From contig MCFE01000433.1 of the NCBI GenBank assembly GCA_002104905.1, positions 11,871 through 75,870 on the forward strand: a DNA stretch of 64,000 nt. The letters run 5' to 3'. The position numbers and the translations under genes are program-made. Origin of the DNA: Basidiobolus meristosporus CBS 931.73 (taxonomy: Eukaryota; Fungi; Basidiobolomycota). Numbering within the stretch: position 1 is the first letter of the stretch; every line of letters begins with the position of its first letter. This document shows, one piece after another, positions 25,800 to 58,490 of this stretch. The notes below the pieces were generated by a model. It made no database searches and was not told the DNA's origin. It was given only the letters and a program-made list of their open reading frames with translations.

Positions 25800-26300
25800 T
25801 GTAATGAACAGACACAAGGCAGGAGAGTAGAACTAGGCAAGGCAGGACCCAGAAAGGACTTGGGTGTGGATCAACAAGGCAAGACGTGTTTTCAAGGCAA
25901 GGCTGATTTCCAAAGCAAGGCTATTTATTCAAGACCTGAGTTTATCAAACTGAGGAATACACCAGGGGGGGATAGGACTATGTATACTTTTTGGCAATAT
26001 GGATGCCAAGAGATATTGGCTAATATTGATGGGGTTCTGGGGTGAAGCACAGTAAGTGTGCCAAGATAGAATATACTAAAGAACAGACTGGAATATCACA
26101 TTGAGATATGTCAGGGGTCAGTTGATTATGTGACTAGGTCATGTTGCATGTAGTTACCATATATGGCATGGGACTACATAAATTTTAATGGGAAGCTTCC
26201 ATAAAATGTTCCATTGTGTAATGTTAACTTGGAGCTTTCAAGAAGTTGCTAGAGTGTAGTAGAACTTTCTAGATGGAATTGGGACTTCTTCAATGACTTA
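25800..26300 (-). repeat. LTR, reverse copy of the 52618-53123 solo-LTR family; right end eroded
   Basis: TGTAATGAACAGACACAAGGCAGG... is the reverse complement of the 3' end of the 52618 LTR. Similarity continues to about 26290. Confidence 0.72.
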
Positions 26301-29300
26301 GCAGGAGCCCAACAGCTTTATGTCTCTGCTCATTCACTGGTTCCCATATGTCCAGGTCTTTGCCAAGCACCGCAAGGGCTAGCCCCTCATCTGCCAGTCT
26401 TTACATAGATTGTTGCAATATTCAAGTGTGTGTTCTTGAGCACTACTCCAAAAGTAGTGTTGTAATCTCTTTGTGTGCCTATTAATATTCCAAAATTTCA
26501 CTGAGGATATTACAATAACCTTTTGAGTTCAAGACATTGTTACTTTGCTTGTGAGTTGGATCACCACTTTGTTAACAATGGTGGATGTGGAGACTGTGGT
26601 AGAAAAATTGCCTTTCTCTGCAAACTCATGTACCTCACTGAAGGGTAGCTCAACAGGCTGCACTTTCAACTCTTGCAAAAACAGCTATTTTCTTGTTGGT
26701 AATTCTTCTTGGCTTTGATGGGATTCAGTCTGTTCCAAGCTTACACTGTTAATTGGCAATAGCTGTAGCCTTTTTCTCATGCTTCCCTGTCTCTGACTTG
26801 GGTAGACTTTCTCCCTTTACCTTTTCCTTTGTCACTGCAAGGTCTTTCACTGCTACTTGTGTGAGTTCTTCTTGTATTCAACTACATTTTCTCCTTGAAG
26901 AATGCGACTATGATGCATCTGTTATGTCCAGCTTGTCCCTTGCTTGCACTCTGTTGGCAACCTGATGCTTCATTTATAATTGATTTAAGCTCTCAGTCTA
27001 TGCTGTGATGAGATCCTGAGGTAGCTGCTTGTTTATATCACTGCCAGGTCCTTAACTGTTATGTTGATTGAGTGCTTTCCAAGTAGAACTACACATTTTC
27101 CTTGGTAAATTTTGTGCTGGTGCATCTGTATCTGCCTGCTTTTACCTTATCAGCACTCTTTCAGCTACCTGATGTCTCTTTGAGGCTTACTTGGAGCTTT
27201 TGGCCCTGCTTTTAACAGGCTATTGAGGACACTGCTGGCTTATGGTCATTGCACCCTGGTTGTTCTGCCATTCTTGAGATACTTACTTAGCAAAGCAATA
27301 ATGGCCCAGAATGTGTTTGCTTGCTTGGATCCCAGATAATGCTCAAGGAGTAAGTCAAGCACATTTTGCTTGGCCTTAAGTTCCTGATGGTCCCATTGTA
27401 TGCAGACCTTAAGGTGTTGGCTTGCTAGAATTCTAATGGTCTCCTTAATATTAGCCCACTTCTGATCATTGCACTCATTAGCTTCACAGATCTTCAATGT
27501 CTTTTGATACTTAGGCTTTGGTGTTGAACACTACATTTTTGCCCTCCCATACTACAATAGGTTTTCTGTGGGCTTTATCTTTGGGCACTGTTGTTATGTA
27601 TCAATGACTGTACAGTGTTCCTCTGCTGTTAAATCAGGAAATGGCTCAACTCTTGGCTGTGACATTGAGATACTCAAGGTCCCTTTTTGCGGCAAAGAAA
27701 CTGCTTTCTCTACCTGGGATATTGATTGCTCTACACCTTTTGTCTGCTCATCCTGTTTCCGTACTATTTCTTGATTTCTCTGGGCCATTGCATCTATCCT
27801 ATCAGCCACTGCACCTAATTGCCTCATCAATACTTAGGTATGAGCAGACAAAATACTGAGTAATATGGATGGTGATGATGTTAAGATGGCCTCTTGCTGG
27901 TCTTGAACCAAAGGTACTGCTTTTGCTACATTCTCAACTACCTCAGCATTATGATCAGCTTGCAGCTCCACAGATATTCCCAATTGCCTACTTGACTGAG
28001 ATCTTGAGGAGTCCATATTATTACCTCTGTGGGAACACTATCCACTGGGCCATTTTTAGTTGTAACCCTGCTTGTTGCACTAAATGTCAAAGCAAGCTGT
28101 TGTCCCACCTTTCTTCTGCTGCTGTCAACGGTGGGGTTTGGCCAGGAACCAGACAACTTTGCTTTTTTTTTGGCGGAATATATATGGCAGTAAGTCAAAC
28201 TAAAGGGGAAATGGGGTTACATATACCTGTGTATGTGGTGCCACAGCTTTATTTATAATGCTTACTATGGCAGGTCATTATTGAATCTTACATTCATGTA
28301 GGTGCAATGTCTCAGATCAAAGATTGTACTAAGTTCACTTAAGTATTGACAAAAAAGTGATATAATAGCATGATGTTATTGAGTGTCAAGCTGTTTGCCC
28401 CCTGGACAAGACTACTTTGAATCTATGCAGTAAGAGAAGAGAAAAAAGACTATGTGGCTATTGTAGCAAGCCTCTCAGCCATGAAGCATACAGACAGCAT
28501 AGGAAGTATTACAAGGATCATGACCAGTGTATTGCCACCCAAGTCATATTAACCATTCACCTGTCACTACTATACCAACAATATCTTGCCAGCCATTTGA
28601 TATATCTATTATGGCACCTAACCATACTTGTCACTTTGCACAAACAGAGTCAGGTGAGCTTGGGATGCTTTTAAGCTCACCTCAGCCTTCTTTATATGGC
28701 ATGCAGAGTGATAGTTATGGAGAAGCAGGCTTGCTGGTAATTTGTGAGCCTACCTTCCCTAACAACTGTACTCTGCATGAGCCTGGCAAAATCCTATTAT
28801 GCAATGAGACAACACCCATGGAAAAAAATGCCAAGGGTACTTTCTGGAGTTGGGTGTGCCTAGTAGTCCATTTACTGGTGAATGATGTAGTGTTGTGGGT
28901 AGAGATGTGGCATGTGTCCACCAATATCAGTATTGGGAGCTTGGAGGATTTACAACTACCTCTTGCCAAAGTCATCCCAGGATGCAACTTACAATGTACA
29001 TGGTATAAGTGGACAACCATCATGCAGCTGGCAACATACAACCCAGAGACCATCTTGATACCAGCATGTGTTAACAGTTGCAGGGCATTCACATCAGATA
29101 GTGCCATCATTGCAAGGTGTCCAACTTGTCAGGAATCCACCAGCTTTGGGGGAAAAGATTAGTTACACTCTGTATATATTCCAGTGATGCCCTGTCCAAA
29201 GAAGCTCATGCAGTACAGCAAATATTGTAAAGCTATAAAGTACAACACTCAGTATCAATCAAGCACAAACATACCCAAAATTGATGGATTCTCATTGAAC

Positions 29301-30181
29301 AAGTACACTACTGGCAAACCACTACCATATCCCAGTCTCATCAGGAATATTACCTTTAAGTCCATTATGGATGTGATGAATTGGCATCTGGAGGACACCC
29401 AGGAAGAGTTGGAAAATACTGAGGACAAAAAAGCACATGGAGACACTTATGCCTATGGCATTAAGAAGCTAAGCAGCCATAATGTGTGGGTAATCAGGCA
29501 AGTAATGCAAAGTTGTGTTGGGTGCAACAAGCAACTAATTTTTATTAGGAGAACTCTACCAGGCTATGCCAGATTTCTCTTGTCAAAAGCCAATCTCTAT
29601 ACCATTCAATATGGAATTGAAACTAACAAGAGCCAGAATGCACCTATAAGGGGGACTGGAATCCAGCAGGGAGAAGGAATATATTGGCTAAATACCAACA
29701 AGCTCTTTGCAGATATTTTGGAGGTATTCATGGCAGAAGTGGTGTCAACCAAGCATATGCTTTGAAGATGTATATGCTACCAGCACTACAGGGCATATAA
29801 TAGCTTTGTAAATATGTCATTGGTGGCAGTTGTGCATATTTTCAGAGGTTAGTGAGCAGGAAGCTAAAGTATTTCTTGATTCAAACTATATGTGGAATAC
29901 CCAAGGTTGTAGTGAGCAAGCAAACAAAGAGGGGCAATTCTACAGTGAACATATGAATTGCATAAGGGGAGATAGAGAAAGGAAATACCATTTGGTCAAT
30001 TGGTATGGTAGCATTCTACAGAACTAGCTGTAAAATTAGCCAAACACTGTTGTGATCCCATTATAAGATTGTGTGGATAGCCATTAGTACTAAGCTGCTA
30101 GCACTATGGTGGTCTCTTTACAAGATCTTGATGGCTAATCTGGATGAGATTCACCTGTGGGACCAAATTATTTTCATAGGG
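26300..30181 (+). mobile_element. CACTA/CMC-type element copy A (ORF2 on minus ~26300-28180; Tnp2 transposase pseudogene on plus ~28410-30010, internally deleted)
   Basis: IPACVNSCRAFT...CPTCQE (Tnp2 N-terminal Zn motif) and LPYPSLIRNI...YGIKKLSS C-terminal region. Terminus GGACCAAATTATTTTCATAGGG ends at 30181. Confidence 0.75.
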
Positions 30182-32686: not shown

Positions 32687-35096
32687 GCCCATGAAATATT
32701 ATTAAGATGATCCTGTCAAAAGGCCATCACAAAGTCAAAGTCCTATGACTAAGTGGTACTGATCTTGTCAGGACACCATCCAGAGACCATTGAGAAAAGT
32801 TGCACCGCAGATTTCACACAAAACTTAGTCAAAATTTTTCATCACAACAATGTATAAGTGGCTTTTGATTGGTTCCCTGTCAATTTGCTCACTTTCTAAT
32901 CCTGGACACTCTGTTGCCTCCTATGTTGGTGTGACATTATTGGCTATTGCCTCTTTTTAACACTCCTTACTTCCTAACTCAACCATTTCTCTTACTTTCA
33001 TGCATACAAATTGATTTATTTCTGTTGAAACTTCAGGTGTACCTCAATTGCCAACTGTACTGACCTATACAAGTCTCTATACCCTACACTAATATTAAGC
33101 CCAACCCCAAACTCAACAAGTAACTCCATTAAAATCCACCTCTCAATAAGTATTTCTGCAGTAACGCTCTGGTTCCACAACTTTGGCGGGAACTCACCAG
33201 CTTTATGCCACTGTTCATTCAATGGCTCTCACACATCCTGGCATTCAGTCAGCACTGCAAGGTCTAGATCTTCATCTGCCAGTCTTTGCAATAAATCCTT
33301 GCAATATTCCAGTGAAATTTCTTGAGCACTGCTCTTGAAGAAGTGCTGCAACCTCTTGGTGTGCCTATTAATGTACCAAAACTCCACTGAAGGCATTGTG
33401 ATAGTCTCTTGAGCTCTTGATATTGTAGCCTTTTCTGTCAGTAGGATCTCCATCCTGTCAATAATGGAGCCTGTGGAGGCTGTGGTAGACAAATTGCCTT
33501 TTTCAGCAAACTCATCTACCTTGCTGGAGTGTAGCTCAACTGGCTGCGCTTCCAACTCTTGTGAAAGCAGCTGTTTTCTTGTTGGTAATTCTTCTTGGCT
33601 ATGATGGGATTCAGTCTATTGCTGGCTTGTGGCATTAACTGGGTAGACATTTTTCCCTTTACCTTTTCCTTTATCACTGCCAGGTCTTTCACTGCTACTT
33701 TGTCTGAGTACTTCTTGTAAAGAACCATGTTCTCTCCCGGATAAATTCTGCTCTGACGCTGCTATTTTGTCCTGCTTGCACTTGCTGGCACTGGTCTGGC
33801 AACCTGCTATTTTTTTCAGCTTGTTTTGAGCTCTCAACTGTAGTTGTGACAGGCTCCTGTAATAGTAGCTGGTTTTTATCACTGCCAGGTCCTTTGCTGC
33901 TACTTTGACTGGGTGCTTTGTGAGTGGTACTACACTTTTTCCTTGATAAGTGTTGTGCTGGTGCATCCATGTCTGCCTGCTTGTCCCTAATTGGCACTCT
34001 TCCAGCTGCCTGATGGTGTTCCCCTGCTGTTACATTGGGAAATGGCTCAATTCTTGGCTGTGACATTGAGCTACTTGAGATCCTTCTTTGCAGCAAAGAT
34101 TATGCTGTTTCTACCTGGGATATTGATTGCTCTACATGTAATATCTGCTCATCCTGTTTCTGCACTATTACCTGATTTCTCCGGGCCATTGCATCTATCC
34201 TATCAGCCACTGCACCTAATTGCTTCATTAATGCTCTGGTACAAGCGGACAACATACTTGCTAATATGGGTGGCAGTGATGTTATTATGGCCACTTGCTG
34301 ATCTTCAACTGAGGGTACTGCGTTTGCTACAATCTCATCTGCCTGAGCATAGTGGTCTGCTTGTGGCTCTGCATAGGTTCTCAATTGCCAACTTGACTGA
34401 GAGCCTGAGGAGTCTGCATTATTACCTTCAATGGGCACACTTTCCACAGGGCCTTTTTTGGATGTAGCCCCACTTGTTGCACTAGATATTGAAGCAAGCT
34501 GTTGTCCAACCATTCTTCTGTTGCCATCAGTGGTGGGGTTCAGTTGAGAACCAGACAACTTTGCTTTATTTTTTGGCGGCATATATATGGGAGTGAGTCA
34601 AACCAAAGGGGAAATAGTGTTACATACACATGTCTATGTGGTGCCATAACTTTATTCATAATGCCTACTATGGCAGGTTATCATTGAATCTTACATTCAT
34701 GTAGGTGCAATGTCTCAAATACAAGACTGTCTTAAGCTCACATGAGTATTGACCAAAACTTGACATAATAGCGTTATGTTGTTGAAGTTCAAACCGTTTG
34801 CCTCATGGACAAGACTGCCTCAATTCTATGCAGTAAGAGAAGAGAAAAAAGACCATGTGGCTATTGTGGCAAGCCTCTCAGCCATGAAGCACACAGACAT
34901 CATAGGAAATATTACAAGAACCATGGCCAGTGTTTTGCTGCCAAAGTCATATTTGACCATTCATTGGTCACTATTGTACCAATATTACCTTGCTGGCCAG
35001 TTGATACTTCTATACTGACACCTGCCCATCTTTGTCACCTTGCGCAAATTGAGTCAGGTGAGTCTGTGACGCCGTTAGGCTTACCTCAAACTTCTG

Positions 35097-35762
35097 AACT
35101 AGATGCAAGTCTTCAGTCCCTCTGTGCTCTTATACATCCTGCATAACATTGATCCACAGAAAAAGGTCATAAAATGGATTTTCTCCTGCATAATAAGTGA
35201 ACCACAGGGGCTGCTTTGCATGAAGATGCAGAGCTATGTTTCACACTCTGTGGCCAAGTATAGGCTCACCTGGCCTCCCTGGCACACTGTGGCATCATTT
35301 GGCAATCATGGCTCAATGTGGTGTTATGATCTGCTGCTTGAATGTTTAAGTTAGATCAGTTTTTAGTCAAATCAGTTTGTATATGTTTATGTTATCAGTA
35401 AATCAGTATTATCTATCAGATCAGTAGCATTAGTCAGCAAATGAATCAGCAGATCCTTATCAGACAGAATTTGATATATTAAGTGGGATCTTATTGGGTG
35501 ATGATGATGCAATCAAATGAGTCATCAGCCACAACCTACATAGGAAATACAATTAGTCAGTATTTGATCTGGCAAATTCATATAAGGAGCTGCTGGAAAC
35601 TCAATAAAGATCAGTTCAGGTCTTAGTGAATACAATACTAGCCAAACTCCCTATTCCTCTACAACTCTTATACCAAGACTTGTAACAGTGGCACTATCCA
35701 ATTGAGCAAGTCTAATAATATGCGCATTTACATGACAGCCATTTATCCAAAGGAACAAGTCT
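35097..35762. mobile_element. Truncated, rearranged foldback MITE (MITE-3) of the AGACTTGTTCC family
   Basis: 35100-35321 aligns to the MITE arm at 58180-58402. TIR ends at 35713 and again at 35744-35762. Interrupted by a solo LTR. Confidence 0.8.
35322..35687. repeat. Solo LTR, 366 bp, TGTTA...TAACA, 4-bp TSD GTGG
   Basis: GTGG at 35318-21 and 35688-91. Removing it restores GGCTCAATGTGGCACTATCC, as in the intact MITEs. Confidence 0.85.
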
Positions 35763-37727
35763 TTTATCTGCATTGGAGAAACCCCAGCCATTAGCAAGAA
35801 AGCAGGTTTTTCTGGGCACAATGGATGGTTTTACTGTTGAATGTGTGAGATCCAGGGGATTTAGTCCATAACTCATATGCATTATCATTACCCAAACACT
35901 AGCACTAAGTGCATTATCTTCCCACTAAGAGAATGTACAGAAGTAAGCATGCAATTGCAGCATAGTTGGCAAGCTATAAGCCATCAGCCAGAATATGGAA
36001 TCAATTGGAAACCGGAGATACTTGAGATAGAGGGTGTATGTTGGAGCAAAAGCTTTCCACTGGGAGCAATGCATTTGCTTTTCAACAATATCCCTATACT
36101 GCTGACCAAGTTGTATATAGGGCATTTCAAACTAAATGTGCCCTTCAAGATACTGGAGAAATTTGAAAGAATTGGCAAGATACTACAGAATATCTGCTAC
36201 ACCAAGTACTTCTCATGGGCTCCAATTAATATTCATACACATATGCCATAATACATATGCAATGACTGGATGAGCTGGATATCTATTTATTTAGGTGGTG
36301 TTCTGAGACCATTCCTACCAAGAATACATTGGAAGCATTGGGAGTCATATGTGGCCATTGTAGGAATATTTATCCAGATGCAGATCACCAATGCCAACTT
36401 TGCACATCTTCAGCTGTTGTATGAGGAGTTTGTGACAGGATTTGAGCGGCTATACTACAAGCATAAAGCTGAACGCGTAGATCTCTGCTGCTACTGTATC
36501 CATTCTCTACCCCACCTTGAACAGCATGTGGAGAATATTGGGCTTTGCTTCACCTTTTGGAAGTTTCCTATGGAGTGGATGCGTGGGGAGATAGGAAGAC
36601 AAGTCAAGTTGCAGGTATTACCATATCCCAATCTCATCAAGATTATTACCTACAACTCCCTCATGGATCTGATGAGATGGCACATGGAGGACAGCCAGAA
36701 AGAGTTGGAGAATACTCAGGACAAATGTGCAAATGAGACACCTATGCCTATGACATTAAGAAGCTAAGCAGCGCCAATGCATGGGTAATCAGTTAAGTAA
36801 TGCAAAGTTCAGTTTAGTGCAACAACCAACTAATTTTTATCAGGAAAACTCTACAAAGATATGCCAAAATTTTCACGGTCAGAAATCCACTTCTACACCA
36901 TTCAATATGGACTCACACAAACAAAAGCCAGGATGCACCTATAATGGGGACTAGAATCCAGAAGGGAGAGTGAACATATTGGCTAAATACCAACAAGCTC
37001 TTTGCAGATATTTTGGAGGTATTCATGGCAGAAGTGGCAACAACCAAGCATATGTTTGTAAGATGTATATGTTACCAGCAGTACGTGGTATACAGAAACT
37101 TTGCAAGTATCACACTAAAAAGCCATAGAGCTGAGGTGATAGAAGTATGACAATTGTGGCAGGTGTGTGTGTTTATAGAGGTTAGTAAGCAGGAGGCCAT
37201 AGTTTTTTTGATTCAGACTATATGTGGAAAACCCAAGGTATTAGTGATTAAGCAAATAAAGAGGGGTGATTCTACAGTGGAATAAATGAATTGCACAAGG
37301 GGAGGTAGATAAAGGAAATACCATTTAGTAAATTGGTACAATAGCATTATACAAAACCAGTGGTAGGCTGTCATACTGCCAATATAATGCCATCAGAGTC
37401 TTGCTGTGAGGCCATCAAAATACCCTCAAGTGTCTTATGTTATAAGGCAATTGGGTGTGCTGGCCAGCTGGATCCACTTAAAGTAGTTATAGAGCCCTAA
37501 AAGACTGCAACAATACCATGCAAATATTGTTACCGCACCAACAAAGTATTATCAAGTTTTATCCGTTTATTTGGTTGTAAATTAGCAAAACACCATTGTA
37601 ATCCCATCATAAGATTGTTAGGAGGGTCACTAATTCCAGGTTGCTAGTATTATGATTGTCTCTAAATGGGATCCTGATGGCTGATCCTGATGAGATCCAC
37701 CATGGGACCAAGTTATATCTCATAGGG

Positions 37728-40107: not shown

Positions 40108-42321
40108 AGACTTGTTCTATTGGATAGTGCCACATAGTACCAGCCTGTTTATAGTGCCAGACCAATCTGGCACCCTATGGCACCATCTGGCACTATAATT
40201 TCTACCATGATGCCAGTGGTATGATACAGTTACTGATAATTTTACTCAATCTTACTTATGTTGCTCAGAATAGTGCATTGCTTGCTTTATTTTCTCCTCA
40301 TAATGCTCCAGATACATTTCTCTCAGTGGATGTATTCTTGTATGAAAATACTATGCGTTAATAAGTATCTTAACTATTTTACCTATTCTGCTATGTTCTC
40401 TTATATATGACTTTCCTCTGTATTTACCTGCAAATATGCTGAATATCTGCAGATATCCAAATGTGTGCTCTACCCTTACTCTGGAATAATTAAATATCTC
40501 ATTTTAGAGCTGGTGCTTCCTGCTAAGCACACCAGTCCTTGGCTTCCTATATGCTGTAATACTCCCTAATTGCTGACAATTCTCTCCTATATAAGCTAAG
40601 TCTGCCATACATTTCTCCCCTCTACTGAATTCTGGATGATTCTCTACCCAGAGTGCTTTGTCATGCCTACTTCCAGCAAATGGCCCACTAAACCAGATGA
40701 TGTTACCCTTGATGTCAGACAGTGCTTGAAACTTCTCACAGAGTACCTTGTACTTGCCAGAATAAAAGTGCCTCTGCCCTCTAGATGGTCTGTTAATCTT
40801 GACTAGGAAGGTATCCAAAATACTCCTAAAATGGCACCTACTGCTGAGCACTCTAGGAAATGGAAGTCTACTGGAGCTTCTCAACCTAGTATTCCAAGCT
40901 TGCTCTAAGTCATTAATACCCTCTGCAAGGTGGTTTGCCATTGCTGTTAGCTGGGAATGGAAGCTTCTAGGACTTTTGTTGCCATGGATGGTGTGATGAA
41001 ACCTTGTAGGGCTATACTTCTTTTAATAGCAGAGAAGCTTAACATGGGATCTCCTTGAGTAGATTGGGGCAGATGGTCCACAGTACTTGGAATAGATCTC
41101 CTCTAGTGTGTCAAAAGGAAATCATGTGGTAGTGATGGGATTGATGAGGGAAGGCCATTCAGATGAGTAAGTCATATTAAAATTGGTAAAGGATTGAGTC
41201 AAAGTGATTTGAGTTGATTTGGCACAATCCGCATTGTTTATCTGATTTTCCATGCATTATGATTAAATCTCCATCAATTGCCATGTATCTTGCCATTGTT
41301 CTACAAAAGTCATCCTTTGAGCTCAGCTAAGGGCTATGCTAATGCATCAATTTGCACCTGCATGTGCCAATTTGCCTAACCATCAGCAATTTTCTTCTGG
41401 TGAACTGACTGATGATGACCCACATGAAGTGCCTCAACCACCAGAGCCCTTGGCAAGTAGAAGCACACATCAGCACATGGCACTTCAGGCCGGTTCAGTA
41501 GGCTCAATTGGAGCAACTCAGCATGGCCAGCTGCAGCATTGCACTCATCAACTAGGAGGCAAAATACTGACAACAAATACACAAGTAGCCAAGTTGACAG
41601 TCAACAAGAAAGTAGTATAGGAGTGCAAAGTGAGTCACTACCAAATGCTGCAGTAGTATTCCCTGTGAGAAGAAAACCCAGGAGATGATGATGCAATTGC
41701 TTTGAATTGCTATCATTTGTAATGATCCCAACAACACATTTTTTTTGCAATCCCAATTGAGCCATTGCTAATCAGCGATCAGCAAATTCTTGATATAATT
41801 GATTTCAAGGTTGTTTCATATTTGAGACAGAACCTCTTTAAATAAACACCCTGTATAAAAACACATAATCTGTAATACCAATGAGGCTATTGGATCTGTT
41901 TGGCACCTACCCAATCACTAGCATGCTAGCTATGACACCTTGTCCAATCACTAGGATCAAGGATTTACTTGCCCAATAGGCAAAATGAGATATTTGAGGG
42001 CAAACCAGGTAGCTTGTTTAATAGTCAATGAGCCAATTGGGGGCTGCCAGCGTCAGGATACTTTTGGACCAATTAACCTGACATACCGTCTAGTTGAAGT
42101 GATGGTAACCGAAACAATAAGTATCAGTGTAGTTTATAAGACTTGTTCCGTTGGATAGTGCCACATAGTGCCAGCCAGTTTATAGTGCCAGATCGATCTG
42201 GCACTCTACGGCACTATCTGGCACTATAATTTCTACCATGATGCCAGTGGTATGATACAGTTACTGGTAATTTTACTCAATCTTACTTATGTTGCTCAGA
42301 ATAGTGCTTTCCTTGCTTTAT

Positions 42322-43206
42322 TTACTCTTCATAATGCTCCAGACACATTTCTCTCAGTGGATGTCTTCTTGTATGAACATACTGTGTATTGATAAGTATC
42401 TTAACTATTTTACCTATTCTGCTGTTTTCTCCTATATATGACTTTCCTCTGTATTTACCTGCCAATATGCTGAATCTCTTCAGATATCCAAATGCGTGCT
42501 CTACCCTTACTCTGAAATGATTAAATATCTCATTGTAGAGCTTCTGCTTCCTGCTAAGCACACCATTCCTTGGCTTCCTATAAGCTGTAATACATCCTAA
42601 TCTCTGACAATCCTCTCCTATATAGGCCAAGTCTGCCATACATTTCTCCCCTCTACTGAATTCAGGATGATTCTCTACCCAGAGTGCTTTGTCATGCCTA
42701 CTTCCAGCAAATGGCCCACTAAACCAGATGATGTTACCCTCAATGTCAGACAGTGCTTGAAACTTCACACAGTGTGCCTTGTACTTGCCAGAATAAAAGT
42801 GCCTCTGCCCTCTAGAAGGTCTGTTAATCCTCACTGGGAAGGTATCCAAAATACTCCTGATATGGAACCTGTTGCTGAACACTCTGGGATATGGAAGTCT
42901 AATGGAGCTTCTGAACCTAGTATTCCAAGCTTGCTCTAAGTCATTCATACCCTCTGCAAGGTGGTTCTCCATTGCTGTCAGCTGGGAATGAAAGCTTCTA
43001 GGACTTTTGTTGCCATGGATGGTGGGATGAAACCTTGTAGGGCAATAGTTCTTGTAATAGCAGAGAAGCTTAACAAGGGATCTCCTTGAGTAGATTGGGG
43101 TTGATGGTCCACAGTACTTGGAATAGATCTCCTCCAGTGTGTCAAAAGGAAATCCAGTGGTAGTGATGGGATTGATGAGAAAAGACCATTCAGATGAGTA
43201 AGTCAT
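42322..43206 (-). CDS. DDE_Tnp_4 (Harbinger/IS5-like) transposase, 294 aa
   Basis: ILDTFPVRINRP, YSGKYKAHCVKFQALSD..G.IIWFSGPFAGSRHD, ADLAY, RVRVEHAFGYLKRF: the complete Harbinger catalytic motif set. Confidence 0.93.
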   Translation of the reverse strand: MTYSSEWSFLINPITTTGFPFDTLEEIYSKYCGPSTPIYSRRSLVKLLCYYKNYCPTRFHPTIHGNKSPRSFHSQLTAMENHLAEGMNDLEQAWNTRFRSSIRLPYPRVFSNRFHIRSILDTFPVRINRPSRGQRHFYSGKYKAHCVKFQALSDIEGNIIWFSGPFAGSRHDKALWVENHPEFSRGEKCMADLAYIGEDCQRLGCITAYRKPRNGVLSRKQKLYNEIFNHFRVRVEHAFGYLKRFSILAGKYRGKSYIGENSRIGKIVKILINTQYVHTRRHPLREMCLEHYEE

Positions 43207-43565
43207 ATTAAAATTGATGGATGATTGTATGGAGGCGGTTTGAATCGATTCGGCGCAATCTGCGTTATTTATCTGATTTTTAACACATTATGGTTAAATC
43301 TCCATCAATTGCCATGTATCCCATCATTATGTTGCAAAAATCATCCGCAAACAATGCCTTGGTACTTTTATTGATGCTTTATTCATAGGTCTATAATCAA
43401 ATAGGAAATCTGCGATTGATGTGATCTGATCCGTGTCAACGCGATCCGAGATGCATCATGCCTAATATATGGAAAATTCAACAATCACTTTAGTTTTCAT
43501 ATATATTTCATATAAGACCAGGTTGATGCCAATATACTGCTGTATAAGTATCCAAATCCGTTGCT

Positions 43566-44837
43566 ATGGTCCCCATACCAAGCCTCAACTCATCTTTAGT
43601 ACAACCCAGACAAAACCCATCCCCCAGCTCTCTAGCGCGGTCCGGACTGCAAAAGTTGATGTTGGATCCGTTCGAGTTCTTGCCAAATGATTTTAGTATG
43701 GCCCAAGTGTCTATGATGAGCCTTCATACAGATATTTGGGCACTACTGATTAATCTAGCAGAACTAGATACCTCAGAGAGTCGACAAAGATGGAAGAATT
43801 TGAGTAGAAAGCTGTGGCATGAGTTCTACATCAAGATGCCAGCCGATGTATGTAAAAAGATATATAACAAGACAAGTATTGAAATCAAGAATGAGCTGAG
43901 AGTGAGGGGATTTGACGAGGAAGCCGCGCGGGAACAATTTTGCGCGCAATTTGCACAGTACGGGCCGGATGCGTCCGTTCGTGCCTCAACTTTGGGAACC
44001 AAAGAGATTTTGAATGAGTTTTTGCCTCAAATGACTAATGTACTACGTGATATATTAGTAGAGCTAAGTGGCTTCCGAGAGCAATATACACAGGACTCAT
44101 CCAGGCAACAGCTCCAAAGTATCAGACAGAGGGTAAGTGAATACCTTGAGGAATCAGATGGTGAGCTTCAGGAGGAAGAATACAGACCGCGAGCAACATC
44201 GTCCAGATCGCGCCAGCACGCCTTGCTGGATTCCCTACCATCTCTTGCAACCACAGCGCGCCGGCGCACGTCAGTCCAGACCACGCCAACATCCTTTACC
44301 AGAACGCCCCGCGTCGAGTCAACGCGCATTGAGTCAACGCGCATCGGGTCAACGCGCGCGCTTCAGAGCAAAACTACCATAACTCGCCAAACTGCTCATT
44401 TAGACACAAGTCTATTGGAGCGGACCGAGTCGCGTCAACATGCGGCATCACATCAAACTCAGCCAAGGGCCATCTCAACGCGTCAAGGTGCGCCTGCGCG
44501 TGCCGTTTTGCCTGACCATCAGCGAGTTACTTCTGGTGAACTGACTGATGATGACCAACATGAAGTGACTCAACCACCGGAGCCCTTGGCAAGTAAAAGA
44601 ACGCGTCAGCGCGTGGCACTACAGGCCGGTTCAGTTGGTTCAGTTGGTTCAGTCGGAGCAATTCAGCGCGGCCAAGCTGCAGCATCGCACTCATCAACTA
44701 GGAGGCAAAATACTGACTACGAATACACAAGTAGCCAAGATGATCGTCAGCCAGGAAGTAGTATAGGTGTGCAAAGTGAGTCACTACCAAATGCTTCAGT
44801 AGTAATCCCTGTGAGAAAAAAACCCAGGAGAAGATGA
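43566..44837 (+). CDS. Harbinger partner protein ORF2, Myb/SANT(trihelix)-like N-terminus, 423 aa
   Basis: W...RWKNLSRKLWHEFYIKMPADVCKKIYNK trihelix-like motif, S/T/R-rich tail and a C-terminal basic NLS-like PVRKKPRRR. The true start codon is uncertain. Confidence 0.75.
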   Translation: MVPIPSLNSSLVQPRQNPSPSSLARSGLQKLMLDPFEFLPNDFSMAQVSMMSLHTDIWALLINLAELDTSESRQRWKNLSRKLWHEFYIKMPADVCKKIYNKTSIEIKNELRVRGFDEEAAREQFCAQFAQYGPDASVRASTLGTKEILNEFLPQMTNVLRDILVELSGFREQYTQDSSRQQLQSIRQRVSEYLEESDGELQEEEYRPRATSSRSRQHALLDSLPSLATTARRRTSVQTTPTSFTRTPRVESTRIESTRIGSTRALQSKTTITRQTAHLDTSLLERTESRQHAASHQTQPRAISTRQGAPARAVLPDHQRVTSGELTDDDQHEVTQPPEPLASKRTRQRVALQAGSVGSVGSVGAIQRGQAAASHSSTRRQNTDYEYTSSQDDRQPGSSIGVQSESLPNASVVIPVRKKPRRR

Positions 44838-45714
44838 TGCGATCGCTTTGAATTGCTGACATTTGTAATGATCCGGACAACTCTTTTTTTTTGCGATCCG
44901 AAACAAGCCATCGCAAATCAGTGATCATCAAATTTTTGATATAAGTAATATCAAGGTCGTCTCACATTTGAGACAGAACCCCTATAAATAAACACCCTGC
45001 ATATATATACGTCATCTGTAATACCAGTGCAGCTATTGGATCTGTTTTGCACCTACACAATTGCTTGCGTGCTAGCTATGACACCTTGCCCAATCACTAG
45101 GATCAGGGATTTACTTGCTCAATGGGCAAAATGGGATATTTGATGGCAAATCAGGTAGCTTTTTCAGTAGTCAATGAGCCAATTGGGGGCTGCCAGCTTC
45201 AGGATACTTTTGGACCAATTAACCACTGAGATACCGTACAATTGGAGTGAGGGTAACCAAAATGGTAAGTATCAGTGTAGTTTATAGTGTGATACACATT
45301 TATTTCCATTTACATTAAAGAAACATATCCAAATAGCGGATTTTACCTGCCATTATAGCGGTATCCGATCACGCACGTGATGCAAGCATTACGACTTGGC
45401 GCAATCATCCGCGCCAACCTCATTGTGTCAGATTGTGCCATAGTGTGCGAGATTGTCCTGCATAGTGCAAAATCGTCCAAGAACAATCCTGCCTTCTGGT
45501 AGCTATAATATCGCGCCCAATCGTTCTTTGCAACCGCGGATTGTGCCGCGCGCCCTGGCACGGTACAATGGAACAAGTCTATAGTGTGATACACATTTAT
45601 TTCCATTTAAATTGAAGAAACATATCCAAGTGCCATATTTTACTTGCCATATTAGCAGTATGCAATTGCGCACATGATGTAGACAATAGGGGTTGGCACA
45701 GTCACCCATGCCAT

Positions 45715-46495: not shown

Positions 46496-47229
46496 AGACT
46501 TGTTCCGTTGGATAGTGCCACATTGAGCCATGAGTACCAAATAGTGCCATAGTGTGCCTGAGAGTCAGAGCAGACCTAAACTTGGCCATAGAGTGTGACA
46601 TATAGTTCTGCATGTTCATGCAAAGCAGCCCCTGTGTTTCACCTATGGTGCAGGAGAAAATCAGTTTTTTAACCTTTTTTTTGGGATCAAAATTGTGCAT
46701 GACATACAAGAGCACAGACAGACTGAAGATATGCATCTGGTACACAATACCCATGGCACTCTAAATCTAGCCCCACAGGCTTGTAGCATGTCACAAAAAT
46801 GCATGGCACTATCTTGGTCCACTGGTACTATCTGGCACTATATTTAAATATTAGCCCTAAAGTAGAACCTATACAAAGCACTTATAGTGCCAGATAGTAC
46901 TAGTGGACCAAGATAGTGCCATGCATTTTTGTGACATGCTACAGGCCTGTGGGGCTAGATTTAGAGTGCCATGGGTATTGTGTACCAGATGCATATCTTC
47001 AGTCTGCCTGTGCTCTTTTATGTCATGCGCAATTTTGATCCCAAAAAAAAGATTAAAAAACTGATTTTCTCCTGCACCATGGGTGAAACACAGGGGCTGC
47101 TTTGCATGAATATGCAGAACTATATGTCACACTCTGTGGCCAAGTTTAGGTTTGCTCTGACTCTCAGGCACACTATGGCACTATTTGGCACTCATGGCTC
47201 AATGTGGCACTATCCAACGGAACAAGTCT
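46496..47229. mobile_element. Foldback MITE-1, 734 bp, 347-bp arms and 40-bp spacer, TSD ATT
   Basis: Arms 46496-46842 and 46883-47229 are near-perfect reverse complements. ATT flanks both sides. Confidence 0.95.
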
Positions 47230-47701: not shown

Positions 47702-50700
47702 AGACTTGTTCCATTGAATAGTGCCACATAGTTCCAGCCTATTTATAGTGCTGGATCAATCTGGCACCCTACAGCACTATCTGGCAATATAATTTCTACC
47801 ATGATGCCAGTGGTATGATACAGTTACTGGTAATTTTACTCAATCTTACTTATATTACTCAGAATAGTGCTTTCCTTGCTTTATTTACTTCTCATAATGC
47901 TCCAGACACATTTCTCTCAGTGGATGTGTTCTTGTATGAACATACTGTGCATTAATAAGTATCTTAACTATTTTACCTATTCCGCTGTGTTCTCTTATAT
48001 ATGACTTTACTCTTTATTTACCTGTTAATATGCTGAATCTCTTCAGATATTGAAATGTGTGCTCTACCCTCACTCTGAAATGATTAAATATCTCATTGTA
48101 GAGCTTCTGCTTCCTGCTAAGCACACCATTCCTTGGCTTCCTATAAGCTGTAATACATCCTAATCTGTGACAATCCTCTTCTATATAGGCCAAGTCTGCC
48201 ATACATTTCTCCCCTCTACTGAATTCAGGAAGATTCTCTACTCAGAGTACTTTGTCATGCCTACTTCCAGAAAATGGCCCACTAAACCAGATGATGTTAC
48301 CCTCAATGTCAGACAGTGCTTGAAACCTCACACAGTGTGCCTTGTACTTGCCAAAATAAAAGTGCCTCTGCCCTCTAGAAGGTCAGTTAATCCTCACTGG
48401 GAAGGTATCCAAAATACTCCTGATATGGAACCTGTTGCTGAACACTCTGGGATATGGAAGTCTATTGGAGCTTCTGAACCTAGTATTCCAAGCTTGCTCT
48501 AAGTCATTCATACCCTCTGCAAGGTGGTTCTCCATTGCTGTTAGCTGGGAATAGAAGCTTCTAGGACTTTTGTTGCCATGGATGGTGGGATGAAACCTTG
48601 TAGGGCAATAGTTCTTGTAATAGCAGAGAAGCTTAACAAGGGATCTCCTTGAGTAGAATGGGGTAGATGGTCCACAGTACTTGGAATACATCTCCTCTAG
48701 TGCGTCAAAATGAAATCCAGTGGTAGTGATGGGATTGATGAGAAAAGACCATTCAGATGAGTAAGTCATATTAAAATTGGTGGATGATTGTATGGAGTTG
48801 GCATGAGTTGATTCAGCACAATCTGCATTATTTATCTGATTTTTAATGCATTATGATTAAACCTCCATCAATTGCCATGTATCCCATCATTATGTTGCAA
48901 AAATCATCCGCAAACAATGCCTTAGTACTTTTAGTGACGCTTTACTCATAGGTCTATAATCAAATAGGAAGTCTGCAATTGATGTGACCTAATCCGTGTC
49001 AATGCAATCCAAGATGCATCATGCATAATATATGGAAAATTCAACAGTCACATTAGTTTTCATATATATTTCATATAAGACCAGGTTGATGCCAATATAC
49101 TGCTGTATAAGTATCCAAATCTGTTGCTATGGTCCCCATACCAAGTCTGAGCTCATCTTTAGTACAACCCAGACAAAACCCATCCCCCAGCTCACAAGCT
49201 TGGTCTGGACCGGAAAGGTTGATGTTGGATCTGTTTGAGTTCTTGCCAAATGATTTTAGTATGGCCTGAGTATCAACAATGAGCCTTCATACAGATATTT
49301 GGGCACTACTGATTAATCTAGCAGAACTAGATACCTCAGAGAGCCAAGAAAGATGGAAGAACTTGAGTAGAAAGCTGTGGCATGAGTTCTACATCAAGAT
49401 GCCATCCAATGTATGTAAGAAGATATATAACAAGACAAGTATTGAAATCAAGAATGAGCTGAGAGTGAGGGGATTTGATGAAGAAGCTGCATGGGAACAA
49501 TTTTGCGCGCAATATGCACAGTATGGGCTGGATGTGTCCATTTGTGCCTTAACTTTGGGAACCAAAGATATTTTGAATGAGTTTTTGCCTCAAATGACTA
49601 ATGTACTATGTGATATATTAGTAGAGCTAAGTGGCTTCCAAGAGCAATATACACAGGACTCATCCAGGCAACAGTTGCAAAGTAGTAGACAGAGAGTAAG
49701 TGAATACCTTGAGGAATCAGATGGTGAGCTTCAGGAGGAAGAATACAGACTGTGAGTAACATTGTCCAGATTGCGCCAGCATGCCTTGCTGAATTCCTTA
49801 CCATCTATTGCAACCATAGCGTGCCAGTGCACATCAGTCAGACTATGCCAACAACCTTTTAGCAGAACACCCTGCATCAAGTCAATATGCATTGGGTCAA
49901 CACGCACGCTTCAGAGCAAAGCTACCAGAACTTGCCAAACTGCTCATTTAGACACAAGTCCATTGGAGCGGACCAAGTCACGTCAACATGCAGCATCACA
50001 TTGAACTCAGCCAAGGGCCATCTCAACGTGTCAAGTTGTGCCTGTGCATGCCATTTTGCCTGACCATCAGCAAGTTACTTCTGGTGAACTGACTGATGAT
50101 GACCAACATGAAGTGCCTCAACCACCAGAGCCCTTGGCAAGTAAAAGAATGCATCAGCATGTGGCACTCCAGGCTGGTTCAGTTGGTTCAGTCAAAGCAA
50201 TTTAGTGTGGCCAAGCTGCAACATTGCAATCATCAACTAGGAGGCAAAATACTGACTACAAATACACAAGTAGCCAAGATGATAGTCAGCCAGGAAGTAG
50301 TGTAGGTGTGCAAAATGAGTCACTACCAAATGCTTCAGTAGTAATCCCTGTGAGAAAAAAACCCAGGAGAAGATGATGCAATTGCTTTGAATTACTATTA
50401 TTTGTAATGATCCCAACCCATTTTTTTGCAATCCAAATCAAGCCATTGCAATTCAGTGATCATCAAATATTTGATTTAAGTAATATCAAGTTTGTCTCAC
50501 ATTTGAGACAGAACCCCTATAACTAAACACCCTGCATATATATACATCATATGTAATACCAGTGCAGCTACTGGATCTGTTTGGCACCTACCCAATCACC
50601 AGCATGCTAGCTATGACACCTTGTACAATCACTAGGATCAGGGATTTACTTGCTCAATGGGCAAAATGAGATATTTGATGGCAAATCAGGTAGCTTGTTT

Positions 50701-51115
50701 AGTAGGCAATGAGCCAATTGGGGGCTGCCAGTCTCAAGATACTTTTGGACCAATTAACCACTGAGATATAGTCCAATTGGAGTGATGGTAACTAAAATGG
50801 TAGGTATCAGTGTAGCTTATAGTATGATACACATTTATTTCCATTTAGATTAAAGAAACATATTGAAATACCGGATTTTACCTGCCATAATAGCGGTATC
50901 CAATTGCGCACGTGATGCAAACATTATAAGTTGGTGCAATCATCCATGCCAACCCCATTGTGTCAGATTGTGCCATAGTGTCCAAGATTGTCTCACATTG
51001 TGCAAAATTGTTCAAGAACAATCCTGCCTACTGGTAGCTATAATATTGCCCCCAATTGTTCTTTACAACCGTGGATTGTGCCACATGCCCTGGCACAGTA
51101 TGATAGAACAAGTCT
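47702..51115 (-). mobile_element. PIF/Harbinger-superfamily element copy 2, full length, both ORFs disrupted, TSD ATT
   Basis: AGACTTGTTCC at 47702 and GAACAAGTCT ending at 51115, with ATT on both sides. Frameshifted transposase (~47883-48769) and ORF2 with stops (~49128-50374). Confidence 0.93.
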
Positions 51116-56349: not shown

Positions 56350-58490
56350 AGGATCCTTATCACCAATCTTTGCAATAAGTCCTTACAATATTCAGGGGCA
56401 TTCTCTTGAGCACTGCTCTTGAAGAGGTGCTGCAACCTCTTGGAGTGCCTATTAATGTTCCAAAATCCCACCAAAGGCATTGTGATGACCTTTTGAGTTC
56501 TTGATGTTGCTACTATGTCTGTCAGTGGGATCTCTACTCTGTCCACAATGGAGGACATGGAGGCTGTGATAAACAAGTTGCCTTTCTCTGCAAACGCATC
56601 TACCTCACTGGAGTGTGGCTCAACTGGCTGTACTTCCAACTCTGGTGAAAATGGGTTCTTTCTTGTTGGTAATTCTTCTTGGCTATGATGGGACTCAGTC
56701 TGTTCAGGGCTGATGGCACTAACTGGTAAGAACTGCATCTTTTTTCTTATGCTTCCCTGTCTCCAGCTTGGGTAGACTTTTTCCCCTTTACCTTCTCCTT
56801 TATCACTGCCTGGTCTTTCACTTCTACTTTGTATGAGTGCTTCTTGTATTGATCTATATTTTCTCCATGATAAATGCTGCTCTGATGCATCTATTTTGGC
56901 CTGCTTGACCCTTGTTGGCACTATGCGGGCAACCAGACAATTCTTTCCTGCTTGTTTTGAGCTCCCAGCTAATACTGTGACTGGCTCCTGAGGTAGGCAC
57001 TTGTTTTTATCACTGCCAGGTCCTTCACTGCTACTTTCACTGAGTGCTTCTTTAATAGAACTACGCTTTTTCCTTGATAAATGTTGTGATGGTGCCACTG
57101 TGTCTGCCTGCTTTTCCTTTTATTGGCATTCTTCCAGCTACCCAATGCCTTTTTGATGCTTGTTTGGAGCTTTTGGCCATGCTTGTAATTGGCTCTTGAG
57201 GAAGCCACTGGTTTCAGCCATGGCACCCTTGTTCTTCTACCTTTGATAGTTTCTGCTATTCTAGAGATACTTTCTTTGCATACCAATGCTGGCCTAAAAT
57301 TCATTTGCTTGCTTGAATCCAGTATAATGCTCATGTAATAAGTCAAGCACATTCTGCTTGGCCTTAAGTTCCTGATGGTCCCATGGTATGCCAGCCTTTA
57401 GATGTTGGTGTACTAGCCTTCTAATGGCCACCTGAATATTAGCCCACTTTTTATCAATGCACTCAAAGCCTTCATGGTTCTTCAATGTCTTTTGATTCTT
57501 AGGCTTTGGTATAAACACTACATTTTTTCTCTCAGATGCTGCGGCAGCTTTTTCTGTGAGCTTAATCTTTGGGCAATGTTGTTGTGCTTCCAAAATTCTA
57601 TGGTGTTCCTCTACTGTTACATTAGGGAATGGCTCAACTCTTGGCTGTGATATTAAGCAACTTAAGTTCCTTCTTTGCAGCAAAGATACTAGACTTGTTC
57701 CGTTGGATAGTGCCACATTGAGCCATGAGTGCCAAATGATGCCATAGTGTGCCAGAGAGGTAAAGTGAGCTTCTACCTGGCCACAGAGTGTGAAACATAG
57801 CTCCGCATCTTCATGCAAAGCAGCCCCTGTGTTTCACCCGTTGCGCAGGAGAAAATCCATTTTTTGACCTTTTTTTGTGGATCAATGCAGCTCAGGATGT
57901 GTAAGAGCACAGGAGAACTGAAGATATGCATCTGGTACTCAATGCCCATGGCACTCTGAATCTAGCTCCTGTAGCTTGTATCATGTCACAAAAATGAATG
58001 GCACTATCTTGGTCCACTGGTACTATCTGGCACTATATTTAAATATTAGCCCTAAAGTAAGATCTATACAAAGCACTTATAGTGCCAGATAGTACCAGTG
58101 GACCAAGATAGTGCCATTCATTTTTGTGACATGATGCAAGCTACAGGAGCTAGATTCAGAGTGCCATGGGTATTGAGTACCAGATGCATATCTTCAATCT
58201 GCTTGTGCTCTAACACATCCTGCACAAAATTGATCCAAAAAAAAAGGTCAAAAAATGGATTTTCTCCAGCACAATGGGTGAAACACAGGGGCTGCTTTGC
58301 ATGAAGATGCGGAGCTATGTTTCACACTCTGTGGCCCGGTAGAGGCTCACATGGCCTCTCTGGCACACTATGGCATCATTTGGCACTCATGGCTCAATGT
58401 GGCACTATCCAACGGAACAAGTCTACTGCTTTCTCTACCTGGAATATTGATTGCACTACACCTTTGATCTGCTAATCCTGTTTCTGAACT
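56350..58490 (-). mobile_element. CACTA-type element copy C (ORF2 region), interrupted by MITE-2 and cut by copy D
   Basis: Aligns to 33270-34170 and 26380-27770; KWANIQVAIRRLVHQHL...WDHQELKAKQNVLDLL. Confidence 0.75.
57691..58424. mobile_element. Foldback MITE-2, 734 bp, 347-bp arms and 40-bp spacer, TSD ACT
   Basis: Arms 57691-58037 and 58078-58424, with ACT on both sides. The empty site AAAGAAACTGCTTTCTCTACC is present in copy A near 27695. Confidence 0.95.

What the first reader, a model, noticed from the sequence alone, without database searches (positions are those of the whole stretch)
35714..35775. Two different family members inserted at the same nucleotide of the CACTA Tnp2 gene: possible TE-targeting transposon
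Seen: autonomous copy 3 (60459-63867) sits in CACTA copy D at ...GCGCATATT|ATT|ATCTGCATTGG, inside HIIICIGDTPA and just upstream of the conserved GD.PA aspartate. In CACTA copy B a TIR ending AAGTCT abuts (T)TTATCTGCATTGG at 35763. A second TIR end at 35713 abuts AATAATATGCGCATTTACATGACAGCCATT, which matches 27/30 of copy 3's other flank (63868-63897). The element in B is the MITE type (GGCTCAATGTGGCACTATCC, left-type ends on both sides), not the autonomous type, and hosts B and D differ at many non-CpG sites. Inference: two independent hits at one base, meaning sequence-directed targeting of another transposon's catalytic gene.
Basis: partly seen in the sequence, partly recalled or inferred. 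Interest (0 to 1): 0.82.

Follow-up and report, generated by a model that had tools for sequence, protein, structure and literature searches.

The report
Same-site hits in a dead transposon
Two different members of one fungal jumping-gene family sit at exactly the same base of two old copies of another transposon's enzyme gene. The ordinary target-sequence taste of that family, known for its superfamily, is enough to explain this, so it is not evidence of a weapon aimed at another transposon.

Summary
In host copy D, a young two-gene PIF/Harbinger-superfamily element (Pangu type; c3, 60459-63867; TSD AAT) splits a Tnp2-family transposase gene four codons before its invariant GD.PA aspartate. 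In host copy B, both junctions recur at the same nucleotides (35713|35714 and 35762|35763). The element there is the 734-bp foldback MITE type.

The 30-37 bp upstream host piece is inverted. The MITE arm lies outside the two junctions and carries a nested 366-bp element. The upstream half of the gene is missing.

Dating:
- c3 is young: 1.4% private changes, intact ORFs, CpG o/e 0.54.
- D (5.5%, CpG o/e 0.22), B (6.8%) and B's MITE arm (6.1%) are old.

So the site was most likely entered twice. Three of the five distinct family sites in the window share ANT followed by ATCT (p about 3e-5). A host copy has roughly 15-20 such sites, so a repeat hit has odds of about 5-18%.

Limits:
- B and D are sister copies that diverged neutrally, so an ancestral MITE cannot be excluded.
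- Five of the seven family insertions lie elsewhere.
- No other genome copies could be fetched.
- Unchecked scan notes on other pieces of this genome also place AGACTT-ended arms beside Tnp2 units.

The parts
60459..63867 (-). c3: a young, apparently autonomous copy of family X (PIF/Harbinger superfamily, Pangu type). Its left-type end is at 63867. The transposase ORF is 62802-63686 (+) and ORF1 is 61201-62442 (-).
   Evidence: TIR AGACTTGTTCC at both ends with TSD AAT. DDE_Tnp_4 hit, E 1e-23. Both ORFs intact, CpG o/e 0.54. 96.9% identical to c1, with 1.4% private changes.
58491..60458 (-). Host copy D, downstream part of the Tnp2-family gene, running to the element's ...TAGGG terminus at 58491. 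The TSD copy AAT is at 60456-60458.
   Evidence: 87% identical to B 35763-37727. Its homologues carry PF02992. The D of GD.PA is invariant in 12 homologues.
63868..64000 (-). Host copy D, 133 bp of the gene upstream of the site, cut off by the window end. The TSD copy AAT is at 63868-63870.
   Evidence: Open frame colinear with P0004 residues 9-53.
35763..37727 (+). Host copy B, downstream part of the gene and the 3' terminus. 35763-35765 (TTT) is a mutated TSD copy.
   Evidence: tblastn hits of Tnp2 homologues.
35744..35762 (+). Family X terminal scrap (14-19 nt) ending in AAGTCT and abutting host B's downstream part. Its first five bases (TATCC) may instead be host sequence.
35714..35743 (+). 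Upstream host flank of the site (30 nt certain, up to 37). Its orientation is inverted relative to the rest of host B.
   Evidence: 27/30 identical to 63868-63897 on the same strand, whereas B's downstream part matches D on the opposite strand.
35688..35713 (+). Terminal 26 nt of the MITE arm in B, ending in AAGTCT at the host junction.
35322..35687 (.). Unrelated 366-bp small element nested in the MITE arm. It has TGTTA...TAACA ends and GTGG on both sides.
   Evidence: The MITE alignment breaks and resumes exactly here. No other copy was found in the window.
35098..35321 (+). Body of the MITE arm in B. It is 87% identical to the m2 arms and 80-81% to the m1 arms, and has no counterpart in c1-c3.
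33183..35095 (+). Host copy B, 5' part. It is joined to the inside of the MITE arm by a deletion junction at 35095/35098.
   Evidence: Homology to copy A 26298-28691 ends here.
57691..58424 (.). MITE m2 (734-bp foldback, TSD ACT), inserted in a third host copy, C, at a different AGAT-ACT site. It is the closest relative of B's MITE arm.
   Evidence: The empty site is at A 27700-27702.
46496..47229 (.). MITE m1 (734-bp foldback, TSD ATT). Its target, ATT-ATCT, matches the site in B and D.
42139..45580 (+). c1: a second young copy with both ORFs intact (TSD ATA), nested in an older family copy at 40108-42138.
47702..51115 (+). c2: an older, decayed copy (TSD ATT, CpG o/e 0.14).
26298..30181 (+). 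Host copy A, an internally deleted outgroup copy that lacks the site.

Best explanation
It has AGACTTGTTCC ends, a 3-bp ANT-type duplication, two genes, and a 734-bp foldback MITE derivative.

The same ANT in a Tnp2-family transposase gene was entered on two separate occasions.
- **First, long ago:** a MITE, either in copy B or in the common ancestor of B and D.
- **Second, recently:** the autonomous copy c3, in copy D.

The repeat hit is explained by the transposase's ordinary extended target preference, here ANT flanked by ATCT. In this gene that motif is spelled by the Ile-Ile-Cys codons just before the catalytic Asp. Two further factors help: local hopping within a dense cluster of family copies, and the fact that insertions into dead transposons cost nothing and are kept.

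The B site was later scrambled. A short segment holding the upstream flank and one MITE arm was inverted, DNA on both sides of it was deleted, and another small element landed in the arm.

**Shown:** the junctions, the element types, the relative ages and the shared target motif. **Inferred:** the number of integration events and the cause of the rearrangement.
For: - **Junctions.** They are identical to the nucleotide in B and D.
- **Element types.** B's element is MITE type and D's is the autonomous type.
- **Ages.** c3 has 48 private changes in 3396 nt (1.4%), both ORFs intact and CpG o/e 0.54. D has 5.5% private changes and CpG o/e 0.22, B has 6.8%, and B's MITE arm has 6.1%.
- **No in-situ origin.** MITE arms share only about 28 nt with the autonomous left end and 11-14 nt with the right end, so the MITE could not have arisen in place from c3.
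- **Target motif.** Three of five distinct sites (S, m1, m2) have ANT+ATCT, against 1.5% of all ANT sites in the window. P(>=3 of 5) = 3e-5; leaving S out, P(>=2 of 4) = 1.3e-3.
- **Number of candidate sites.** Known host parts hold 2-7 such sites per 2 kb. With 8-30 candidate sites per host copy, two hits coincide with probability 3-12%, and any two of the three insertions into host copies seen here coincide with probability 10-34%.
- **Literature.** Extended target preference (9-15 bp) and precise excision are established for PIF/Harbinger elements (PMC2836001, PMC4561436). The Pangu group has ANT TSDs, AG-starting TIRs, a length of about 3.5 kb, and two ORFs of which the second has no known motif (PMC4482050).
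Against: - Only two host copies in the window carry the site, and both are occupied. No empty copy of this host family was seen.
- B and D are sister copies (86% identical to each other, 80-82% to A). Their coding divergence looks neutral: dN/dS 0.66, 95% interval 0.43-1.13, with differences by codon position of 34/37/35. This fits a common ancestor that was already disabled.
- B's MITE arm differs from m2, which lies 67 bp from D's terminus, by 12.6-13.4%. That is about the same as the B-D host divergence. It would fit an ancestral MITE that later left D.
- The target motif rests on five sites.
- Other ATTATCT sites in host copies are empty.
Confidence: 0.6

Rival explanations
1. Single ancestral insertion with replacement. 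A MITE entered the site once, in the ancestor of B and D. In D it was later swapped for an autonomous copy by homology-guided repair or recombination between family ends, as happens with P elements in Drosophila. The site would then have been chosen only once.
For: B and D are sisters with neutral divergence. B's MITE arm is about as old as B itself (6.1% against 6.8%). The MITE and the autonomous element share 28 nt at one end.
Against: Only 11-14 nt are shared at the other end. Elements of this superfamily cut within the TSD and excise precisely, leaving no element sequence on the flanks to seek a donor (PMC4561436, PMC2836001). D shows a clean c3 with a perfect AAT/AAT duplication and no MITE trace. 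Replacement is not documented for this superfamily, as far as I know.
Confidence: 0.15
2. Evolved targeting of a rival transposon. The family would have a dedicated, sequence-directed hot spot in the catalytic core of Tnp2 genes, used as a safe haven or to disable a competitor.
For: Two of seven family insertions in the window are at this one base. A third, m2, is in another copy of the same host family. A related Tnp2 gene from a metagenome (L001, 55% protein identity) has the same ATTATCT at the homologous Ile-Ile codons. Unchecked notes from other pieces of this genome describe AGACTT-ended arms beside Tnp2 units.
Against: Five of the seven insertions are elsewhere, including one inside a copy of the family itself. 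The m1 and m2 targets share only the 7-base motif with this site. Identical motifs elsewhere in host copies are empty. A second related Tnp2 gene, L002, lacks the motif at that position. A 7-base preference is sufficient on its own.
Confidence: 0.1
3. B's junctions were copied in rather than inserted. The stretch made of the MITE end plus inverted flank in B would be a templated repair patch taken from another occupied host copy. B would then give no information on where an element integrated in B.
For: The flank piece is inverted and only 30-37 nt long, with deletion junctions on both sides. An unchecked note describes a similar inverted end-plus-flank patch elsewhere in this genome (s1-209874).
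Against: The second junction, the family end abutting B's own downstream part at 35762|35763, is in the native configuration. Even if the patch reading were true, a MITE at this site in some host copy is still required, so the count of arrivals at the site does not change.
Confidence: 0.1
4. Pure coincidence, with no preference beyond ANT.
For: The genome holds many copies of both families, so some coincidences are expected somewhere.
Against: There are about 170 ANT sites per 2 kb of host, which gives well under 1% per pair. The shared ATCT flank is itself non-random.
Confidence: 0.05

Closest known systems
Maize PIF and rice mPing/Ping/Pong (PIF/Harbinger superfamily)
   Same: Cut-and-paste elements with two genes, a 3-bp TSD and MITE derivatives moved in trans. 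They excise precisely and prefer a target that extends beyond the TSD (9 bp in plants, 15 bp in vertebrates; PMC2836001, PMC4561436). From my own knowledge, not checked here: PIF was discovered through repeated independent insertions at one identical site in the maize R gene (Walker et al. 1997; Zhang et al. 2001).
   Different: Here the TSD is ANT rather than TWA. The apparent flank preference is one-sided (ATCT) and rests on five sites. The recurrent target lies in another transposon's gene rather than in a host gene.
Pangu group of the PHIS superfamily (Han et al. 2015, PMC4482050)
   Same: ANT TSD, TIRs that start with AG, a length of about 3.4-3.5 kb, a DDE transposase plus a second ORF with no known motif, and presence in fungi.
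   Different: One copy (c1) has ATA rather than ANT. Placement on the transposase tree was not tested. The paper lists ascomycetes and basidiomycetes but no early-diverging fungi.
P-element replacement (targeted transposition) in Drosophila; from my own knowledge
   Same: One family member ends up at the exact nucleotide of another with the same TSD. This is the pattern seen when B and D are compared.
   Different: That mechanism depends on element ends left on the flanks after excision. PIF/Harbinger excision leaves none (PMC4561436). It is not known for this superfamily.
Site-specific elements that live in one conserved repeated target, such as R1/R2 and Pokey in rDNA; from my own knowledge
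   Same: Repeated occupation of one nucleotide position in a multicopy sequence.
   Different: Nearly all copies of those elements sit in the target. Here most copies are elsewhere.

Membership tests
PIF/Harbinger (PHIS) superfamily, Pangu group - family X | DDE transposase of the IS5/DDE_Tnp_4 type | tested here: met
   PF13359, E 1.1e-23, on the 294-aa ORF of c3.
PIF/Harbinger (PHIS) superfamily, Pangu group - family X | 3-bp TSD of the form ANT | tested here: met
   ATT, AAT, ATT and ACT in four of five complete copies; c1 has ATA.
PIF/Harbinger (PHIS) superfamily, Pangu group - family X | TIRs of 11-40 bp starting with AG or GG, a length of about 3.5 kb, two ORFs, and no known motif in the second ORF | tested here: met
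   AGACTTGTTCC ends and lengths of 3409-3442 bp. The 413-aa ORF1 has no Pfam family and no relatives in the word search.
PIF/Harbinger (PHIS) superfamily, Pangu group - family X | Transposase falls in the Pangu clade of the PHIS tree | not tested
CACTA/EnSpm-type (Tnp2, PF02992) transposon - the host element | Transposase_21 (tnp2) domain, with the site inside it | tested here: met
   The window's own decayed pieces give no Pfam hit. Nine of ten homologues scanned from the whole-library search do carry PF02992. The site aligns inside the domain, four codons before an invariant Asp.
CACTA/EnSpm-type (Tnp2, PF02992) transposon - the host element | CACTA-like termini and a short TSD | tested here: inconclusive
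   Three copies end in ...TCATAGGG, that is a CCCTA-type terminus. The 5' terminus and the TSD were not resolved.
Dedicated site-specific or TE-targeting transposon | Most copies occupy the one target sequence | tested here: not met
   Two of seven family insertions in the window are at the site and five are elsewhere. A genome-wide count was not possible.
Dedicated site-specific or TE-targeting transposon | Occupied target copies lie on separate branches, with empty sister copies | tested here: not met
   The only two copies with the site are sisters. No empty copy of this host family is available.
Homology-guided element replacement | A resident element was present at the site in D before c3 arrived | not testable with these tools
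   D shows no trace of one. The test needs population or sister-genome data.

The most novel reading that the evidence does not exclude
The preferred target of this Pangu-type family (ANT+ATCT) coincides with the conserved Ile-Ile-Cys codons just before the catalytic Asp of a co-resident Tnp2 transposase. The family would then repeatedly knock out that transposon across the genome. That would be a standing transposon-against-transposon interaction, or a safe-haven strategy, rather than a one-off coincidence.
Probability: 0.1. Interest if true: 0.65.

Novelty: new member of a known kind. Interest (0 to 1): 0.3.

Why it matters
If a genome-wide count showed this base to be occupied far more often than the family's target motif predicts, and on independent host branches, it would be a rare documented case of one DNA transposon systematically disabling another's transposase.

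As it stands, the finding is an example, in an early-diverging fungus, of the extended target preference already known for PIF/Harbinger elements. It also offers a first candidate flank preference (ANT+ATCT) for the little-studied Pangu group. Separately, it shows how a foldback MITE site decays by inversion and deletion.

Tried and rejected
**Searches that came back blank**
- I tried to fetch other genome copies. Word-index protein searches with the family transposase gave only three distant hits. Searches with the host piece and with ORF1 gave nothing.
- A scan of metagenome contigs for the left-end motif gave nothing.
- A sequence look-up in earlier findings gave nothing.

**Results that did not decide the question**
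- Pfam on the window's own host ORFs gave nothing. The host family was settled only through homologues found by the whole-library search.
- The two closest homologues lie on short metagenome contigs of 1.0 and 1.6 kb, which serve only as distant empty sites.
- dN/dS between B and D was meant to show whether their ancestor was still a working gene. The result is neutral and does not discriminate.
- The host 5' terminus could not be located.

**Readings I rejected**
- A 47-bp mini-element at 35667-35713. The AGACTTGTAAC there is the end of a nested 366-bp element.
- The MITE in B arising in place from a c3-like copy. The arm interiors are unrelated.

**Paper not held**
- The PIF founding paper (PMC60095) is not held. 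The maize R-gene precedent is therefore cited from memory only.
Full report
**What the window is.** The window has 43% G+C and is CpG-depleted (o/e 0.41). It is packed with nested transposons. An earlier follow-up on a neighbouring piece named the organism as the fungus Basidiobolus meristosporus. I did not test that.

**The inserting family (X).**
- The terminus AGACTTGTTCC occurs 13 times, against 1.3 expected by chance.
- The complete copies are c1 (42139-45580), c2 (47702-51115) and c3 (60459-63867), plus two 734-bp foldback MITEs, m1 (46496-47229) and m2 (57691-58424). An older partial copy at 40108-42138 has c1 nested inside it.
- The TSDs are ATA, ATT, AAT, ATT and ACT.
- c3 carries a 294-aa ORF with a DDE_Tnp_4 domain (E 1e-23) and a 413-aa ORF with no known family.
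- These features match the Pangu group of the PHIS superfamily: ANT TSD, AG-starting TIRs, about 3.5 kb, and two ORFs of which the second has no known motif (PMC4482050).

**The host element.** The decayed host ORFs gave no Pfam hit. A whole-library search with the 169 residues downstream of the site found 83 relatives. Nine of the ten I scanned carry Transposase_21/tnp2, PF02992. Reading D across the site with c3 and one TSD copy left out gives an open frame...VKAHIIICIGDTPAISK.... It is colinear with P0004...KTRIILCIGDTPAISK.... The Asp of GD.PA is invariant in 12 homologues.

**Host copies in the window.**
- A (about 26298-30181) is internally deleted and lacks the site.
- B has its 5' part at 33183-35095 and its 3' part at 35763-37727.
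- C (56363-58484) carries m2 and is cut by D.
- D runs from 58491 past the window end at 64000.

Three of these copies (A, B and D) end in ...TCATAGGG.

**The observation in D.** The insertion is clean. The host ends ...GCAGAT-AAT, c3 follows, and the host resumes AAT-AATATGCGC.

**The observation in B.** The same two junctions exist.
- ...GGAACAAGTCT ends at 35762 and abuts TTT-ATCTGCATTGG. This is the host's downstream part, 87% identical to D over 1985 bp.
- ...AAGTCT ends at 35713 and abuts AAT-AATATGCGC..., which matches D's other flank at 27/30.
- The end at 35713 belongs to a MITE arm. 35098-35321 is 87% identical to the m2 arms and has no counterpart in c1-c3. The arm resumes at 35688 after a nested 366-bp element with GTGG on both sides.

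So the element type in B differs from that in D, at least on the upstream-flank side.

The locus is not a simple insertion.
- The upstream flank piece (35714-35743, perhaps to 35750) lies on the same strand as in D, while the rest of host B lies on the opposite strand. The piece is therefore inverted within B.
- Both family ends point the same way, and the MITE arm lies to the left of both junctions.
- On the left, the arm is fused by a deletion junction (35095/35098, 2-nt overlap) to the host's 5' region. About half of the transposase gene is missing.
- The simplest history starts from a normal arrangement: upstream host, whole MITE, downstream host. The segment made of 37 bp of flank plus one arm was then inverted, with deletions on both sides. 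The right-hand joint lies at or beside a TATCC shared by the host (GTTATCC in D) and the MITE (CTATCC).
- Because of that overlap, the claim that the 35762 end is left-type is weak. It scores 18/19 against left-type ends and 12-15/19 against right-type ends, but the two types tie over the last 14 nt.
- The AGACTTGTAAC at 35677-35687 is the terminus of the nested element, not a family end.

**Relative ages.**
- c1 and c3 are 96.9% identical. Private changes are 1.5% for c1 and 1.4% for c3. c2 is 92% identical to both.
- c1 and c3 keep both ORFs and much CpG (o/e 0.69 and 0.54). c2 has o/e 0.14, host D 0.22 and host B 0.13.
- In the region shared with A, the host tree is ((B,D),A). Private changes are 6.8% in B and 5.5% in D.
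- B's MITE arm has 6.1% private changes against the four arms of m1 and m2.

Hence the MITE reached the site at about the time B and D separated, or before. c3 reached it much later.

**One entry or two?** The element types and ages rule out simple inheritance of one element. Three readings remain.
- (a) The MITE entered B and c3 entered D.
- (b) The MITE entered the B-D ancestor, left D by excision, and c3 then entered the restored site.
- (c) The MITE was ancestral and was replaced by c3 through homology-guided repair.

Readings (a) and (b) both mean that the base was chosen twice.

Several facts fit an ancestral MITE and so keep (b) and (c) open.
- B and D are sisters.
- Their coding divergence is neutral: dN/dS 0.66, interval 0.43-1.13, with differences by codon position of 34/37/35.
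- B's MITE arm and m2, which lies 67 bp from D's end, differ by 12.6-13.4%. That is about the same as the host divergence.

Against (c):
- PIF/Harbinger elements cut within the TSD and excise precisely, leaving no element ends on the flanks (PMC4561436, PMC2836001).
- The MITE and c3 share only 11-14 nt at one end.
- D shows no trace of a MITE.

**Is special targeting needed?** Written with the matching side to the right, the five distinct target sites are S (...ATT-ATCTGCA), m1 (...ATT-ATCTATC), m2 (...AGT-ATCTTTG), c2 and c1. Three of the five have ATCT next to the TSD. Only 78 of the 5173 ANT sites in the window (1.5%) do. That gives P = 3e-5, or 1.3e-3 for two of four when S is left out.

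The known host parts hold 2-7 such sites per 2 kb. I estimate about 15-20 per full copy, but the middle of the host is not in the window. With 8-30 equally used sites, two hits coincide with probability 3-12%. Any two of the three insertions into host copies seen here (B, D and m2 in C) coincide with probability 10-34%.

The family is abundant in this genome according to unchecked notes, so such a coincidence should occur somewhere. Extended target preference is a known trait of the superfamily (PMC2836001).

Against a dedicated anti-Tnp2 function:
- Five of the seven insertions lie elsewhere, and one of those is inside a copy of the family itself.
- Other ATTATCT sites in host copies are empty, for example B 35913 and A 27334.
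- Of two related Tnp2 genes from metagenomes, one has ATTATCT at the homologous Ile-Ile codons and the other does not.

**Leads from earlier notes (unchecked).** Three notes on other pieces of this genome describe AGACTT-ended or foldback arms directly beside Tnp2 units (s1-222284, s1-209866, s1-242940). The one follow-up among them called its case a MITE scrap at a broken junction. These notes fit either a hot spot or the spread of an occupied host lineage. They are the reason the novel reading keeps about 10%.

**Limits.** No other copy of either family could be fetched from this genome. The census and tree that would decide the matter remain to be done. The target motif rests on five sites, and the ages rest on a few hundred to a few thousand aligned bases.

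**Verdict.** Two separate entries at one base are likely. They are explained by an ordinary extended target preference of a Pangu-type PIF/Harbinger family. Targeting of a rival transposon's catalytic gene is not shown.

Noticed in passing
window 35322-35687: A 366-bp non-coding element with TGTTA...TAACA ends and GTGG on both sides is nested in the MITE arm of B. No other copy was found in the window.
   Followed up: partly
window 40108-42138 and 45581-45713: An older, about 85% identical copy of family X is split by the young copy c1 (TSD ATA). The family has therefore inserted into itself. Seven family members lie within 29 kb, which suggests local hopping.
   Followed up: partly
window 56363-58490: Host copy D (terminus at 58491) is itself inserted into another copy of the same Tnp2 host family, C. 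C carries MITE m2, and the empty m2 site (ACT) is visible in copy A at 27700-27702.
   Followed up: partly
window 28691-29323: Host copy A keeps the N-terminal zinc-finger-like region (ORF 28527-29162). It then jumps to the C-terminal third of the gene. It is an internally deleted, non-autonomous derivative that lacks the catalytic domain.
   Followed up: partly
L001 428-1018 and L002 432-1490: The closest database relatives of the host transposase (52-55% identity) come from two short ENA metagenome contigs. No protein of this host family, and no protein of family X from this genome, is present in the protein collections that were searched.
   Followed up: partly
window 36820-36840 / 59390-59410 / 29490-29510: B and D share ...CAGTTAAGTAATG where A has ...CAGGCAAGTAATG. 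This is either a stop codon shared by B and D or a decayed intron donor. If it is a shared stop, the B-D ancestor was already non-functional.
   Followed up: no
window 25136-25513, 38167-38523, 39659-39985, 53326-53847: ORFs with retrotransposon-like sequence (reverse-transcriptase or integrase-like, judged by eye) flank the DNA-transposon cluster. Not analysed.
   Followed up: no
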